Shown: positions 56,400-62,771 of the stretch, in pieces | How the letters are laid out: each line of letters starts with the position of its first letter | How positions within the stretch are numbered: position 1 is the stretch's first letter | NCBI GenBank assembly: GCA_965202585.1 | Contig: OZ241828.1 | Coordinates: forward strand, 54,870,001-54,934,000 | DNA: 64,000 bases | From: Thalia democratica | Lineage: Eukaryota | Reading direction: 5' to 3' | Notes under the pieces: model-generated | Databases searched by the model: none | What the model saw: only the letters and a program-made list of their open reading frames with translations | Told to the model about the DNA's origin: nothing | Made by a program: the position numbers and the translations under genes

Positions 56400-59300
56400 T
56401 TAAAAGCTCTTCCAAGGCATAAGGCAAGAGAATAGCGATGTAAAAAAATTGCCTTTCTTTTTATTTTTCTCGCAATTTAAACACCCGACCTTGTTCTTTC
56501 TGAATCTGAATCTTCTTCTTCTTGTCTGTGATCTTTTTTCTGGCTCAGATTCAGTTGAGCTTGCCGAAGGAAAAATTTCGGAGATAGATTGTTCGTTTTC
56601 GATTGTTATAATAGGAGTCTTTTCCTCGATGTCCTGTGAGAAATCGACTAAAGTTTTTGAAGGCAGCACTTCCCAAGCCAGTTTCTTATTCTCAAGTTTT
56701 TTCACAGTTTTCGTTTCTTGGTCGTTGCTTGAGGAATCAACCGAAATTTCAGAAAGGAGCAAGTCACAGCTTAGTTGTTCTTTTTTGATAAAAATATCAG
56801 AGATGGTTTCTTGATTGGTGCTAGAAAAATGAACTAAATCTTTAGGAGGGAGCAATTCATATGTTAGTTGTTCTTTTTCGATTATGTTTTCAGTGATATT
56901 TTCTTTTTTGTTGTTTGAGGAATCAACTAAGACTTCTGAAGGGAGCAATTCACAATCTAGTTGTTCATTTTCGATTATATTCTCAGAAGTGTTTTCTTGG
57001 CTGTTGTTTGAGGGAGCAACTAAATCTTCTGAAGGAAGCAATTCAGAAGTTAGTTGTTCAGTTTCGATTATATCCTCAGAGATATTTTCTTGGCTGTTAT
57101 TTGGGGAAACAACTGAGACCTCTAAAGGGAGCAGTTCAGAAGCTAGTTGTTTATTTTCGACTATACCCTCAGATGTGTTTTCTTGACTGTTGTTTGGGGA
57201 AACAACTAAGACTTCTGAAGGGAGCAGTTCAGAAGCTAGTTGTTCAGTTTCGATTATTTTCTCCGAGATGTTTTCTTGGCTGTTATTTGTAGAAACAACT
57301 AAGACTTCTGTAGGGAGTAATTCAGAAGCTAGTTGTTCATTTTCGATTATATTATCAGTGATATTTTCTTGGCTGTTATTTGGGGAAACTACTAAGACTT
57401 TTGTAGGGACGAATTCAGAAGCTATCTTTTCATTTACAATTATATACTCAGAAGTGTTTTCTTGACTGTTGTTTGAGGAAACAACTAAATCTTCTGAAGG
57501 GAGCACTTCAGAAGCTAGTTGTTCATTTTCGATTATATTCTCAGAGATATTTTCTTGGCTGTTGTTTGAGGGAGCAACTAAATCTTCTGAAGGAAGCAAT
57601 TCAGAAGTTAGTTGTTCAGTTTCGATTATATCCTCAGAGATATTTTCTTGGTTGTTATTTGGGGAAACAACTAAGACCTCTAAAGGGAGCAGTTCAGAAG
57701 CTAGTTGTTCATTTTCGATTATATCCTCAGAATTTTTTTCTTGACTGTTGTTTAAGGAAACAACTAAATATTCTGAAGGGAGCAATTCAGAGGCTAGTTG
57801 TTCATTTACGGTTATATCCTCAGAGATATTTTCTTGCTTCTTGTTAGAGGAAACAACTGAAACATCTGAAGGCTTAGAATCAATTGAGTCTGTAGTAGAG
57901 GGCAATTCACAGCTTAAATGCTCTTTTTCAATTACTTTTTCAGATGTGTTTCCTTTATTGGTGCTTAAAGAATCAACTAAATCTTCTGACGGGAGCAACT
58001 CAAGAGCTAGCAGTTCCTCTTCAATTTTTTCGAAGGAACTTTTTTCTTTGTTGCTGCTTGAGAAATCAACTGAAACTACTGAACTCTTAGAATCGATAGA
58101 ATCTGCTGAAGGCAGCATTTCGCAGATTAATTGTCCAATTTCAATTGTTCTAACAGGAGTATTTTCCTGTACGTCCTGCGAAAAATAACTTAAATCTTCT
58201 AAAGGGAGCAATTCCGAAGCTAGTTGTTTGTTTTCGATTATATTCTCAGAAGTGTTTTCCTGCACTTCCTGAGAAAAATCAACTGAAACTTCAGAAGGCA
58301 GCAATTCCCAAGCTATCTGCTTTTTCACAGGATTCATTTCTCGGTCGTTGCGTTGGAAAACCCCGCAATCTGAATCTTTTCCAAACACGCAAATCACGTG
58401 ACTCGCGTCGTAGCGAAAGTACAGCATCGATTGCCTCGTGTGAAGCTTGAAGCAGCTCATCTCCACTTGGAGGTTCAGCCGGAAGTAGGCGACGGCAAAA
58501 TTTAAAAAGTTTAGGGAGTTCCCCTGGAGGAGGCCGGAGACGGGCGGCGCGATCAAAGAAGCCTCCGAGGCGGGTGAGGAGAAGCGCACCTCCTCCAAGT
58601 CCTCCTCGAACTCGTCGCTGGAGTAAAAGTACATTTCTCCCTCCATGGAGCTGCTGCTGCCTCCAGTGGAGACAGTGCTCGCCTCAGAGTCGTCGTCCGA
58701 TGAGTAGGAGTCTTCGGATGAGGAAGTCAGGGAAATGGACGAGGGATCAGGCGACATGTAAGATCTCCACTCCTCGTCGGGATCCTGAATATTTTTAATG
58801 ATGTTTTAGTATAAACAAAATAAAATTCTACACATTTATTGATTCACAAATTTGTTTATAAAACAATGTTTCACTCAGTTAATAAGATCAATGAGGTCCT
58901 CGGTTATACTAAATACCTTGTTTAAATGTAATTATTACTCTTGAAATAGTCTAAAAGTATAAAAACAATAAATTATAACAAATAATAAGTGCAATGGTAT
59001 ATTAGGAAACAATGTTGGTTCAAGACTGCAACCCTTTTTTGGATAAACGATTTAGTTAAACCAGTTATTACCAACGCACAAAAAAAATTGAACATGTTTT
59101 TTGTTACTATTGTGCTTAGTTGTGTGCAGCTTTTAATTTTTGATCCTCAAAAGTATTTATATAAAAAGTTAATTGAGACATTAAAACTGTTTTGGTCTTT
59201 TTATAGATTTTTAATTTTTTGTTTCAACAAACGTTACCTCGAAGAATGCGTTTTTATCAATTACGCTTCCAATAACGTAGAACTTGAGTTCGTTTTTTAT

Positions 59301-60275
59301 TTGGAACCGAAGTCTTTTGGCAGGACTTTCGTTTCTGAAAATCTGTTGCAAAGCAATAACAATAAGATAAATAAAACAAAAAGAATTGTGTGAAAACACC
59401 AGTTTTTTTTTAAGAAAGAAAGCTAAAATTTACAATAAGAAACTATGGTAGATGTTTTTCAGAATGGTTGTTATAATTTTCTTATATAAAAGTATAAAGG
59501 CAGGAATTAGAAAAGAACTTAACATTTAGCAAACATATGTTTGTCATGGAACACCGATGGCTTATTATAAATCAAACAAGCTAAGTATTATTTATAATTA
59601 AGTATTACTTAAGAAATTTTAAATCACAAATTTGTACTTATATGACATATTTTACACTTAACATACTTAATCATTTATATAATTTAATTTTAACTCTTAA
59701 AAAACTTACAGGATTTTTCAAGATTCCCTTATTAGGTTGATCTGGGTTAGTTTCTACTTTTTCAGAAGCTTCGTTTTTGGATAATTCGTACTTCATAAAG
59801 CTCTGTGTAATTATAAAATTTGTAGAAGCATTTTCAAACAAACTCTAAAGCTGAGTAATGAAAGCCAACGTATATAAAAGTAAGTTTGTACTTTGAATTA
59901 TAAACATTTTAACTTCTCAGAAAATATAATTAAAAGCATATCATTGTTTCGAAAGTATATAACCTTAACACAGTTTTCATTGCTATTATTTTAAACATTT
60001 GATATTTTAAAGGATATTTTAAGAACACAACTATAGAACTACAATCTAAAAAATGTATGTCTATAGCAAAGATGACAAAAAGAATTTAGTACATTTAAGA
60101 GTTGTTAGTGTAAAAGTAATGAAGAAATTTTGAAAACAAAAACTTTCTTCATTCTAGTTTATCTGTTTATAAAAACTGTATTAACAATTTGCAAACACAA
60201 GACTTAAAGTTATAAAATTATAAAAACAGTTCTCACCTCTAGTTGGATTCTACCATCAAAATTGACTTTTTCCAT
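56400..60275 (-). CDS. Uncharacterised acidic repeat protein with N-terminal PP1-docking-type motifs, 4 coding exons, ~873 aa
   Basis: Minus-strand exons 60275-60237 (MEKVNFDGRIQLE, donor GTGAGA), 59802-59710 (SFMKYELSK...PNKGILKNP, donor GTAAGT), 59342-59238 (IFRNESPAKRLRFQIKNE...NAFFE, donor GTAACG) and 58784-56400 (DPDEEWRSYMSPDP... to stop). All are CAG-flanked and phase 0. The last exon contains the 785-aa ORF of the track. Confidence 0.75.
56580..58330 (-). repeat. Coding tandem repeat, 93-bp / 31-aa unit (~18 copies, consensus ELLPSEDLVVSSNNSQENISENIIENEQLAS)
   Basis: ELLPxE recurs every 31 aa in the ORF (two 40-aa variants). 57001-57150 and 57559-57708 differ at 2 positions (558-bp offset). 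Confidence 0.92.
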
Positions 60276-60512
60276 CTTAATAGCTGTTGCAGTTTGGGAA
60301 AAACTAAAATATAGATTGTATGTACGATATATGACTTTCCAAAAAGTTTGTTTTATACGATTTTGTGAAACGCAGTTTGGATTTAAATTAACGAGATATT
60401 TAAAGTATATATGACGTATTTCAGAATTTTATTTTAATTGATTTTTTGTTTTGTTTATTTTTGCGAAGTTATTTACACAGATCTGTCTAAAATAAACATT
60501 TTTAAACATATA

Positions 60513-61370
60513 CTGTAACCTCTCGCTTATTTACGCACATTGTGTCCACAGAAAAAAATGCGTAAAGATATGAGAGATCGTAAAGATAAATTAGGTACAG
60601 AATATACTTACTATAATGGCTGTTTCTTGATATTGCTTCTGGTTAAAAGCGGACTGGGGACTTTACCTCTTTTTACAATTTGTTTACTTTATTTATATAT
60701 ATGAAAACAAAAGATAAAACTATACCTCTATTAAAAAAAGGATTTAAATTTATATGAAATAATAATACTTGTAGAAAAATTTTAAAAAATTTAATAACAA
60801 GTAGATTTTATCTTAATCTTTATTTATATGTGACTTATTTGATACTTAACATTTATATTATATTGTACTTAGCAAATTAAATTTATAATTATGCATTTGT
60901 TTACAACTAAGAAATGGTGTGATTTCTATATTAAAATCTGTTTCTATAGTCTTTAAAACATGAATTTGGTGCTTTAATGGATTTCTTCTTTTGAACAAGA
61001 ATATATAAGATATAAGAAAAATGTTTAATAAAAATTGTTTATGTTACTACAACTTTTTTTAGTTTAACATTTGCCCACATAAGGATAAACCTTAATTTAA
61101 TCTCTTATTGTTAATAAAATTTATGATATACTGAGTTATAACTAAATCTTCATCAATTAGTCAAAGAACATAAGTTTACAAAGTCTAAAGATAAAGAGAG
61201 GTGAGTTAGCATTTAGAAACATATTTTAAGTTAATAACATACAATAAACCTAATTTGAGCAATAATAAAAAAATTAAAATTTTTTTTATTTGAATTTTTA
61301 GAATTCTAAAATGCGTAACTAAACGAGAGTGCGTAACGTCACAAGTTCGTAAATATGCGAGAGGTTACTG
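60513..61370. mobile_element. Non-autonomous Tc1/mariner (pogo/Tigger-like) element
   Basis: TA|CTGTAACCTCTCGCTTATTTACGCAC ... GTTCGTAAATATGCGAGAGGTTACTG|TA. 26-bp TIRs 23/26 identical, TA on both sides, subterminal TGCGTAA motifs. Confidence 0.82.
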
Positions 61371-62771
61371 TATGGCAATTAATTTCTAGTAGAAAAACTT
61401 AGGGATCAGCCGCGGTCCAAGTGTGACCCGAAAAAATAGTTTAGCGCGTCAGGATTTTTATCTAATAAACAACTAACGCTGAAAAGGCAAATTAAATCTT
61501 TTTTAAAATTAAAATTTACAATTTTTTTTTTTGTAAGTAAACTGTGCAGTGTAGCCTATTTTATGTTTATTTCGTTACAGTAACATTCATTAAACTAAGA
61601 AATTTTCAAAGCATGTAATTTTAAACACAATAACCCGCGAAGAACTTTTTCAGTAAATCTAGCCCGTTTCTCATAAAAGGCTGCCGACTTCTGACTAACA
61701 ACTGTTTTATACTAGATTATAAAACACTTAAGTTTGAGATAATTCCTACCTGAATTCAGAACTAGAAGTTATATTAAAATGGTCAGTGGATAGCATGCTA
61801 AAATTAAATAGTATCAAACAAGGTGCATGCTCTTTCACTTAGTTAAAATAATTATTTCGAAAAATATTCATTTATAAATCAAAACCAATATATAAATAAC
61901 TTATAAAAAGGTAAACAATTGTAATAACTTGGGTCTTCTTAAAATAGATAGTAGTCTTAATTAATCAGAACCCATATGTATGACATTAAAAGCTGTTAGT
62001 AATTTATTTAAAATGAGGTTTTATTTAAATAAAAATTTTATATTATATGTCTAATTATCTATTCACGAGTCATGCTAGGCTTGCTGTGATGGGGTAGGGT
62101 AAGCAGAGATAAAATTTGTAAGATTAAGAGACTACAAATTAAACAACAAGGTGAATTTGTTTTAAAAGTTGGAATGAAAGTGTTAGTAGTGTAAAAATAA
62201 CAAAAAAATATTATATATTAAAATGAGGTTCAAGAACGACTTATGCACATATTCAAAAATGATATACTGTTTGTTGATTTTAATCCTTGTTTTACAAACT
62301 TGCACGAAAAACACAACCATTTAACAATATTTTCAGAGAAAAAATATTTTCTCATAACAAAAGAATTTTCAGTATCTTAAGTCTATATTTTATCTTGATT
62401 GTAAAGGGTGATAGGAAATGCACAGAAACTTGAAAAATCAGAACAAGCTTCGAGTATTTCAGCCTGGGCTAAAACTTTAAAATAAATCAGATAACTTTTA
62501 AGTTTTATGGTTAAATAACGTTAAAAGTAAGCTTAAGTTTTATAATTAAAAATGTTTATACTCTCTTTTTTGTTGAGGCTAATTGCCGGTAGTCTTCTTG
62601 ACTAGGTATGAGCAGAACTGAATTGGTTGTAGTTTTTGTTAAAATCTTTATTTTAGCAGTGCAGCTTCATCTTCAATGCCAATTGGATTAAGCGAGTAGG
62701 TGTGTTTAATTTTTGTTTTTACTTAAGTTTAAGTATTTTATCTATTTATTAAATTCTTTCAAAATACTTTA

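What the first reader, a model, noticed from the sequence alone, without database searches (positions are those of the whole stretch)
59238..60275. Three small upstream exons add clustered PP1-docking-type motifs to the repeat protein
Seen: the 785-aa ORF is the last exon of a spliced gene whose first ~60 aa contain KVNF, GILK (at the end of the second coding exon) and, ~10 aa later, KRLRF. Established: RVxF ([RK]-x0-1-[VI]-x-[FW]) and SILK ([GS]IL[RK]) are PP1-binding motifs, and SILK usually lies shortly N-terminal of RVxF. KRLRF is a Leu variant. Inference: a lineage-specific PP1 regulatory or scaffold protein with a long Ser/Glu/Asn-rich disordered array as spacer or phospho-substrate.
Basis: partly seen in the sequence, partly recalled or inferred. 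Interest (0 to 1): 0.7.

Follow-up and report, generated by a model that had tools for sequence, protein, structure and literature searches.

The report
Orphan tunicate repeat protein, PP1-docking-like head
The three small upstream exons are real, selectively maintained coding exons of a tunicate-only repeat protein. They carry a motif string that resembles a protein-phosphatase-1 docking site, but PP1 binding and expression are both untested.

Summary
Observation confirmed. On the minus strand, four exons (60275-60237, 59802-59710, 59342-59238, 58784-56400) join in frame through canonical GT-AG sites. They give an 873-aa protein with KVNF (3-6), KGILKN (38-43), KRLRF (53-57) and an FY pair 7 residues later.

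No RNA run holds the gene, so the junctions rest on comparison:
- An inverted paralogue about 59 kb away keeps all splice sites.
- Its exons are 95-97% identical with no indels. Its introns are 73-78% identical with many indels.
- For exons 1-3, dN is 0.021, against an intron distance of about 0.3.

A Tara Oceans contig from a close relative keeps GILK and reads KKIRF, a canonical RVxF. A distant Tara homologue keeps the exon-4 acceptor and DPDE-W-RSY but has Leu at the ORF's Met, so it too needs upstream exons.

SILK followed by an RVxF-like site arises in 0.09% of shuffled N-termini. RVxF alone arises in 24-34%. The G-to-F spacing (18) equals that of this genome's own inhibitor-2, but alignment to inhibitor-2 is not significant.

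PP1 docking is plausible (about 0.5), not shown. The complex prediction gave no answer. The family is an orphan with no Pfam match. It is a new candidate member of a known kind, of modest interest.

The parts
60276..60520 (-). Conserved 5' flank (promoter or 5' UTR). The paralogue homology starts here.
   Evidence: 87% identical to the paralogue, against 73-78% for the introns. The 150 nt before the ATG hold no in-frame ATG.
60237..60275 (-). Coding exon 1, MEKVNFDGRIQLE. KVNF lies at 60258-60269.
   Evidence: ATG, then donor gtgaga. The paralogue shows 2 synonymous and 0 non-synonymous differences.
59710..59802 (-). Coding exon 2, 31 aa, ending KGILKNP. The SILK-type GILK lies at 59716-59727.
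   Evidence: Acceptor cag and donor gtaagt are kept in the paralogue and in the Tara contig L013. GILKNP is invariant in all three.
59238..59342 (-). Coding exon 3, 35 aa. The RVxF-like KRLRF lies at 59304-59318 and the FY (PhiPhi-like) pair at 59277-59282.
   Evidence: 97% identical to the paralogue with no indels. The Tara relative reads KKIRF. QIKNELKFYVIGSVI is invariant.
56400..58784 (-). Last exon (794 codons plus stop), holding the 785-aa ORF.
   Evidence: Acceptor ttcag|GAT. The same acceptor and DPDE[ED]WRSY are present in the distant Tara homologues, where the ORF's first codon is TTG, Leu.
58758..58784 (-). DPDEEWRSY, a family-wide conserved motif directly after the exon 3/4 junction.
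   Evidence: 8 of 9 residues are identical in homologues that are otherwise 40-47% identical.
58599..58631 (-). YFYSSDEFEED, the invariant core of the acidic Ser-rich segment (residues 89-157).
   Evidence: Y.YSSDEFE.D columns are invariant in alignment A2. Residues 89-157 hold 26 S/T, 17 D/E and 1 K/R.
58350..58550 (-). Small hydrophobic, beta-rich conserved segment (residues 158-224). Fold unknown.
   Evidence: Conserved block AP.VSGL...NL.VE...F.LHT.QSML.F. The AF2 model shows a helix and five strands, but pLDDT is only 50-69.
56538..58364 (-). Array of about 19 units of 31 aa, consensus NNSQENISEDIIENEQLASELLPSEVLVVSP.
   Evidence: TRF finds period 93 nt, 12.5 clean copies, with higher-order periods 186 and 279. 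The regex count is 18 cores at 31-aa spacing. AF2 of 4 units gives pLDDT 33 and no secondary structure. The paralogue has fewer units and the distant homologue has one.
56403..56522 (-). Conserved basic, Cys-bearing, hydrophobic C-terminal tail: RRRRFRFRKNKVGCLNCEKNKKKGNFFTSLFSCLMPWKSF.
   Evidence: Together with DPDE-W-RSY and Y.YSSDEFE.D, one of the best-conserved blocks across the family (A3). The last 45 aa hold 15 K/R, 1 D/E and 3 Cys. No window is hydrophobic enough for a transmembrane segment.

Best explanation
This is a four-exon gene of a tunicate-restricted orphan family. It encodes an 873-aa, largely disordered protein.

The first roughly 90 residues (three mini-exons plus the start of exon 4) are among the most constrained parts between the two paralogues. 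They carry a composite PP1-docking-type string: GILK, then 10 residues, then K-R-L-R-F, then 7 residues, then F-Y. A second canonical-looking KVNF sits at the very N-terminus.

The most likely mechanism is inferred, not shown. This head would dock on the SILK and RVxF/PhiPhi grooves on the non-catalytic face of PP1c. PP1 would then be tethered to the rest of the protein:
- a CK2-type acidic serine cluster;
- a small conserved hydrophobic segment;
- an array of about 19 acidic 31-aa units;
- a polybasic, cysteine-bearing tail that may place the complex on a membrane or another anionic surface.

The protein would therefore act as a PP1 targeting subunit or scaffold, or as a docked substrate.

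Shown: exon structure, purifying selection, motif presence and their conservation among close relatives.
Inferred: PP1 binding, disorder, and the role of the tail.
For: Gene model:
- In-frame GT-AG junctions.
- Paralogue exons are 95-97% identical with no indels. Introns are 73-78% identical with 28-47 gap columns. All splice sites are kept.
- For exons 1-3, dN is 0.021 and dS 0.123. Intron JC distances are 0.27-0.34.
- The distant Tara homologue keeps the exon-4 acceptor and DPDE-W-RSY and has Leu at the ORF's Met.

Motifs:
- KVNF, KGILKNP and KRLRF are all kept in the paralogue.
- The Tara relative L013/P0008 keeps GILKNP and has KKIRF, a canonical RVxF.
- SILK followed by an RVxF-like site arises in 0.09% of shuffled N-termini.
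- SILK lies N-terminal to RVxF, as reported to be the rule (PMC3792071).
- RVxF followed by PhiPhi after a variable spacing is used by 90% of solved holoenzymes (PMC9813921).
- A SILK+RVxF composite binds more tightly than RVxF alone (bioRxiv 10.64898/2026.09.09.750541).
- This genome's own inhibitor-2 genes have GILK to F spacings of 16-18 residues; here it is 18.

The target exists: the genome encodes a canonical PP1c (L006, E 1e-210 to PP1-alpha).

The array is modelled at pLDDT 33 without secondary structure.
Against: - No direct evidence of binding. The complex prediction (PP1c plus the exon-3 peptide) scored 0.02, which the tool says counts neither way.
- The motif next to SILK has Leu at the V/I position in both copies of this genome. 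Canonical definitions ask for V or I.
- It is followed by Q-I-K rather than the usual acidic residues.
- An RVxF match alone is common by chance (24-34%).
- All sequences that show the motifs are close relatives, so conservation has little power.
- The one distant homologue has no upstream sequence.
- No RNA run holds the gene, although the scan's earlier notes report RNA for other genes of this genome.
- No Pfam or other family match.
Confidence: 0.5

Rival explanations
1. The gene and its conserved N-terminal module are real, but the PP1-type motifs are coincidental. The module would then serve another partner or role, such as localisation, a different docking interaction, or part of a fold spanning KFYVIGSVI...DPDEEWRSY.
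For: - RVxF-type matches are frequent by chance (24-34%).
- The SILK-adjacent motif has Leu at the V/I position.
- The whole block QIKNELKFYVIGSVI...DPDEEWRSY is as conserved as the motifs themselves, so the constraint need not be on the motifs.
- Across a genome of some 15,000 genes, a 0.1% coincidence is expected about 15 times (my estimate).
- The complex prediction gave no support (not evidence against).
Against: - SILK, a basic-flanked RVxF-like site and an aromatic pair occur in the right order and spacing.
- The only change seen at the V position is the conservative L to I, which gives a canonical motif.
- The spacing is the same as in the genome's own inhibitor-2.
Confidence: 0.35
2. 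The head is a diverged copy of the inhibitor-2 (PPP1R2) N-terminus. It would be homologous, not merely analogous, so the protein would be an I-2-derived PP1 inhibitor or chaperone fused to a repeat array.
For: - The KGILKN hexamer is shared with I-2 of this genome (L020: NGILKN).
- The G-to-F spacing is identical (18).
- Asn at +4 and Leu/Ile at +6 after the aromatic residue occur in both (and my reading).
Against: - Local alignment to the genome's I-2 proteins is not significant (p 0.13-0.18 by 5000 shuffles).
- No IPP-2 Pfam hit on exons 2 or 3.
- The KIDEPxTPY and HYNE-type parts of I-2 are absent.
- An intron splits SILK from RVxF here, but not in the spliced I-2 gene (L020).
Confidence: 0.05
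3. It is a highly diverged KNL1/Spc105-type kinetochore scaffold: an N-terminal SILK/RVSF PP1 site followed by a fast-evolving repeat array.
For: The layout looks the same: SILK, then an RVxF-type site within the first 60 residues, then a lineage-variable array. No Knl1_RWD_C match was found elsewhere in the genome, but an exon-by-exon search of a divergent domain is weak.
Against: - No MELT-like unit: 0 matches to M[DE][ILVM][TS] or [ILVM][DE][ILVM]T.
- No coiled coil or RWD domain. The C-terminus is a 40-aa basic tail.
- There are two paralogues.
- The last exon of the distant homologue is only 209 aa with one unit.
Confidence: 0.03
4. The locus is not an expressed protein-coding gene. It would be a silent or decaying duplicate, and the spliced model an artefact.
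For: No RNA run holds the stretch, while the scan's earlier notes report RNA for other genes of this genome.
Against: - Both paralogues keep open frames of 873 and 735 aa.
- dN/dS is 0.17-0.33 in every non-repeat segment.
- There are no exon indels, and splice sites are conserved.
- Homologues in two further plankton sequences are also intact.
Confidence: 0.05

Closest known systems
Inhibitor-2 (PPP1R2 / IPP-2), N-terminal PP1-docking segment
   Same: KGILK-type SILK motif, followed 16-18 residues later by the aromatic residue of a degenerate RVxF site. This genome's own I-2 reads NGILKN-x13-F; this protein reads KGILKN-x13-F.
   Different: - No significant sequence similarity outside the motif.
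- No IPP-2 Pfam match.
- The later I-2 elements (KIDEPxTPY, the inhibitory helix) are absent.
- This protein is about 6 times longer, with a repeat array and a basic tail.
KNL1 / Spc105 N-terminus
   Same: SILK, then an RVxF-type motif near the N-terminus of a long, mostly disordered protein. Its repeat array changes copy number quickly between lineages.
   Different: - The unit is a 31-aa acidic repeat with no MELT-type site.
- There is no RWD or coiled-coil C-terminus.
- The SILK-RVxF spacing is 10 residues, against about 29 in human KNL1 (my knowledge).
- The gene is duplicated.
RVxF-PhiPhi regulators such as PPP1R15B/CReP and PNUTS
   Same: A basic-flanked [KR][KR][VIL]xF, followed after 6-8 residues by an aromatic or hydrophobic pair. 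Here that is KRLRF-QIKNELK-FY. CReP has KKVTF-LEEVTE-YY and PNUTS has TVTW-x8-YF (both recalled from memory).
   Different: - No homology (no Pfam hit).
- The motif is N-terminal rather than C-terminal.
- Leu stands in place of Val/Ile in this genome's copies.
RRP1B
   Same: Shows that a SILK-type site and an RVxF site on one disordered chain can both engage PP1, and that non-canonical motif variants bind (PMC9813921). KVNF(3-6)...GILK(39-42) here has the RRP1B order, with RVxF first and 32 residues between.
   Different: No sequence relationship. Which of the two RVxF-like sites, if either, is used here is unknown.

Membership tests
PP1-interacting proteins with a composite SILK + RVxF docking string (functional class, not a homology family) | SILK motif [GS]-I-L-[RK], not followed by D/E/G | tested here: met
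   G39-I-L-K42-N43. Invariant in the paralogue and the Tara relative. Arises in 0.6% of shuffles.
PP1-interacting proteins with a composite SILK + RVxF docking string (functional class, not a homology family) | RVxF motif [RK]-x(0,1)-[VI]-{P}-[FW], C-terminal to SILK | tested here: inconclusive
   KRLRF has Leu at the V/I position in both copies of this genome. The close relative has KKIRF, which fits. KVNF (3-6) fits but lies N-terminal to SILK.
PP1-interacting proteins with a composite SILK + RVxF docking string (functional class, not a homology family) | PhiPhi pair 5-8 residues after RVxF | tested here: met
   F65-Y66 lie 7 residues after F57 and are invariant in three sequences. This is a sequence-level match only. 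The cited paper notes that such motifs are hard to call from sequence.
PP1-interacting proteins with a composite SILK + RVxF docking string (functional class, not a homology family) | Motifs conserved in orthologues beyond close relatives | not testable with these tools
   The contigs of the distant homologue stop 43-168 nt upstream of the last exon. Protein and metagenome searches found no other relative.
PP1-interacting proteins with a composite SILK + RVxF docking string (functional class, not a homology family) | Physical binding to PP1c through these residues | not testable with these tools
   Complex prediction with this genome's PP1c and the exon-3 peptide returned 'no answer' (0.02). 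The spliced head has no reference, so it could not be submitted.
Inhibitor-2 (Pfam IPP-2, PF04979) | Significant match to the IPP-2 profile or to I-2 proteins | tested here: not met
   No Pfam hit on exons 2, 3 or 4 at E<=1. Local alignment to this genome's I-2 gives p 0.13-0.18. Genuine I-2 genes exist elsewhere in the genome.
KNL1 / Spc105 | MELT-type Bub3-binding repeats | tested here: not met
   No M[DE][ILVM][TS] or [ILVM][DE][ILVM]T in either paralogue.
KNL1 / Spc105 | C-terminal coiled coil and RWD domains | tested here: not met
   No Pfam hit. The protein ends in a 40-aa basic tail that is conserved to the stop codon in all homologues.
PPP1R15 (GADD34/CReP; Pfam PP1c_bdg) | Match to the PP1c_bdg profile, with a C-terminal RVxF-PhiPhi followed by the eIF2alpha/actin-binding helix | tested here: not met
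   No Pfam hit on any exon. The motif is N-terminal and is followed by an acidic serine tract.

The most novel reading that the evidence does not exclude
A tunicate-only PP1 scaffold built, by convergence, on the KNL1 plan. A SILK/RVxF head would tether PP1 next to a multivalent array of an acidic 31-aa linear motif (core IE.E..L..E.LPS). The array has expanded from 1 unit in one lineage to about 19 here. A polybasic, palmitoylatable tail would anchor the protein. Array length would then tune how many copies of an unknown client are brought under PP1 control.
Probability: 0.12. Interest if true: 0.55.

Novelty: new member of a known kind. Interest (0 to 1): 0.35.

Why it matters
If the head binds PP1, this would be a lineage-restricted PP1 regulator with no homologue outside pelagic tunicates. 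It would add to the picture that the PP1 interactome grows by short motifs arising on new disordered proteins. It would also offer a natural experiment: 1 versus about 19 repeat units, and Leu versus Ile at the RVxF valine position. If it does not bind PP1, the locus is still a clean example of an orphan gene whose tiny 5' exons can be called from paralogue divergence alone. PP1 has hundreds of motif-based partners, so a specialist would not be very surprised.

Tried and rejected
- RNA support: the look-up of sequencing runs listed no RNA holder. The three runs laid are genomic DNA contigs that cover introns and exons alike, with no splice joints. Some 'variants' in exon 2 are paralogue-derived contigs.
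- Complex prediction (this genome's PP1c, L006, plus the 35-aa exon-3 peptide): 'no answer', score 0.02. Not used as evidence either way.
- Pfam on exons 2, 3 and 4: nothing.
- The search for homologous proteins on exon-4 residues 1-170: nothing. With P0001: only itself.
- ESM Atlas with P0001: no usable hit.
- Two JGI metagenome scans (A2, A3): no relative.
- PDB sequence search with exon 3: only a chance hit, E 1.4.
- AF2 of exon-4 residues 1-165: pLDDT 49. This is too low, so no fold search was run.
- Inhibitor-2 homology: not significant.
- KNL1: no MELT, no RWD.
- Own-genome searches with exon 3, P0001 and the tail profile found only the two paralogues. A weak tail-like hit on C8 (E 0.005, with stops) looks like AT-rich noise.
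- P0002-P0004 from the exhaustive search match low-complexity or repeat sequence and were not pursued.
- Not done: Pfam, profile or complex runs with the spliced 1-95 head. A spliced sequence has no reference in these tools.
Full report
**What is in the sequence.** The minus strand of 56400-60275 holds a four-exon open reading frame.
- Exon 1 (60275-60237) reads MEKVNFDGRIQLE and ends at a gtgaga donor.
- Exon 2 (59802-59710) follows a ttacacag acceptor and ends ...NKGILKNP before gtaagt.
- Exon 3 (59342-59238) follows tgcaacag and reads IFRNESPAKRLRFQIKNELKFYVIGSVIDKNAFFE before gtaacg.
- Exon 4 (58784-56400) follows atattcag, starts DPDEEWRSYMSPD... and contains the 785-aa ORF.

All junctions are phase 0, and the joined CDS is 2622 nt (873 aa). 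My reading: the only nearby alternative acceptor for exon 3 runs into a stop. KVNF lies at residues 3-6, GILK at 39-42 and KRLRF at 53-57.

**Are the small exons real?** RNA could not answer this. No RNA run holds the stretch, and the three runs that do are genomic DNA contigs that cover the introns too. Comparison answers it instead.

The same genome has an inverted paralogue about 59 kb away, just outside the window (C4:54863555-54866978, plus strand).
- Its exons 1-3 are 95-97% identical with no indels.
- Its three introns are 73-78% identical with 28-47 gap columns.
- Every splice site is kept.
- By Nei-Gojobori, exons 1-3 have dN 0.021 and dS 0.123. Intron JC distances are 0.27-0.34.

Both copies are intact, at 873 and 735 aa.

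An exhaustive HMMER search found one distant homologue, P0001 and three near-identical proteins from Tara Oceans metagenomes, 40-47% identical. On their contigs the same acceptor (ttatag|GAC) and the peptide DPDEDWRSY precede the called start. That start is a TTG (Leu) at the position of this gene's Met. That homologue therefore also needs upstream coding exons in the same phase. Its contigs stop 43-168 nt upstream, so those exons cannot be seen.

**Are the motifs conserved?**
- The paralogue keeps KVNF, KGILKNP and KRLRF.
- A 1070-nt Tara contig (L013, found through the ORF around exon 3, P0008) is 90% identical to the paralogue at the DNA level. It comes from a close relative. It keeps ...KKGILKNP and reads IFRNESPAKKIRFQIKNELKFYVIGSVIDKDEFFE.

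The only changes in the RVxF-like site are therefore R to K and L to I. Those changes give a canonical [RK]x[VI]xF. The caveat is that all three sequences are close, so this has limited power.

Between the paralogues, the head (exons 1-3, dN 0.021) and the first 90 codons of exon 4 (dN 0.005) are the most constrained parts. The beta-rich segment has dN 0.075 and the tail 0.15.

**Is it more than chance?**

| Pattern, in shuffles of the 79-aa head | Frequency |
|---|---|
| RVxF match | 24% (34% with Leu allowed) |
| SILK | 0.6% |
| SILK followed by an RVxF-like site | 0.09% (2.5% for the whole protein) |

Allowing for a whole-genome scan, I estimate that chance cases and true cases are about equally common. 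Several secondary features fit PP1 docking:
- SILK lies N-terminal to RVxF, as reported to be the rule (PMC3792071).
- Basic residues precede the motif.
- An aromatic pair (FY) lies 7 residues after it, like the PhiPhi site used by 90% of solved holoenzymes (PMC9813921).
- SILK+RVxF composites bind more tightly than RVxF alone (bioRxiv 10.64898/2026.09.09.750541).
- This genome's own inhibitor-2 genes place GILK 16-18 residues before the aromatic residue of their RVxF-equivalent site. The distance here is 18.

The genome encodes a canonical intronless PP1c (L006, E 1e-210 to PP1-alpha).

Two features count against docking. Both copies in this genome have Leu at the V/I position, and the residues after the motif are not acidic.

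The only binding test available, PP1c plus the exon-3 peptide, returned 'no answer'. It is not counted either way.

**What is the rest of the protein?** Pfam finds nothing. After the head come, in order:
- An acidic serine tract with an invariant Y.YSSDEFE.D core. Residues 89-157 hold 26 S/T, 17 D/E and 1 K/R.
- A conserved hydrophobic segment that AF2 draws as a helix plus five strands, at pLDDT only 50-69.
- About 19 units of a 31-aa acidic repeat, NNSQENISEDIIENEQLASELLPSEVLVVSP. Four units are modelled at pLDDT 33 with no secondary structure, which is consistent with disorder.
- A 40-aa tail, FRKNKVGCLN...NFFT.LFSC..PWK, one of the best-conserved blocks in the family. It is strongly basic, has three Cys and is too short for a transmembrane segment. 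I read it as a peripheral membrane or polyanion anchor. This is inference only.

The paralogue has fewer repeat units and the distant homologue has one. The array is therefore a recent, lineage-specific expansion around a conserved core, IE.E..L..E.LPS.

**Comparison with known systems.** The head works like the SILK-RVxF(-PhiPhi) docking strings of inhibitor-2, KNL1, RRP1B and PPP1R15B. Membership in each family was tested and fails.
- Inhibitor-2: no IPP-2 profile hit, and alignment to this genome's I-2 is not significant (p 0.13-0.18).
- KNL1: no MELT-type unit and no RWD or coiled-coil C-terminus.
- PPP1R15: no PP1c_bdg match.

The family itself is an orphan. It has two genes in this genome plus Tara plankton contigs, and nothing else was found in any database searched here (5.8 billion and 1.84 billion protein sets, JGI metagenomes).

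**Verdict.** The PP1 interpretation is reasonable, and the I-containing relative and the I-2-like spacing strengthen it somewhat. It is still a motif-level inference, and I put it at about 0.5. It would be a new candidate member of the known class of motif-based PP1 partners, and interest is modest. The spliced head could not be submitted to profile or complex tools because it has no reference. The steps that would settle the question are RNA junctions, the N-terminus of the distant homologue, and a pull-down with motif mutants.

Noticed in passing
L005:4555-7978 (G000:C4:54863555-54866978, + strand), about 3 kb before the window's start: An intact inverted paralogue (735 aa) with the same four-exon structure. 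The two copies are convergent and about 59 kb apart, so they flank most of the window, including the P5B-ATPase gene noted earlier by the scan.
   Followed up: yes
window 58515-58784 (first 90 codons of exon 4): This stretch is 55% G+C against a 22-30% background. It is almost identical between the paralogues (dS 0.034). dS is 0.23 in the next 75 codons, 0.88 in the tail, and about 0.3 in the introns. It looks like a gene-conversion tract, possibly GC-biased, or unusually strong nucleotide-level constraint.
   Followed up: partly
window 60384-61500: Directly upstream of the gene's conserved 5' flank lies a very high-copy repeat. Summed contig word depth is 1e5-8e5, against about 100 over the gene, with many internal joints. 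Paralogue homology ends at its edge (60512).
   Followed up: partly
L016, L018, L019 (G000:C9 and C5), L020/L021 (C7), L006 and L008 (C8): The genome carries four intronless inhibitor-2 copies (intact ORFs were read in three of them), beside a spliced I-2 gene. It also has an intronless canonical PP1c (330 aa) and a divergent PP1-like ORF (357 aa). This suggests retro-copying of PP1-pathway genes.
   Followed up: no
L009-L013 (Tara Oceans metagenome contigs): The family's only relatives outside this genome come from Tara Oceans plankton metagenomes. One contig is about 90% identical in DNA. This suggests the window's organism, or a close relative, is a pelagic tunicate sampled by Tara.
   Followed up: partly
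window 56403-56522; P0001 residues 166-209: The tail starts with another RVxF-like string: RRRRFRF here, RRTFRF in the paralogue and KRLKF in the distant homologue. The distant homologue ends in CCKQ. I do not know whether these are lipidation or docking sites.
   Followed up: no
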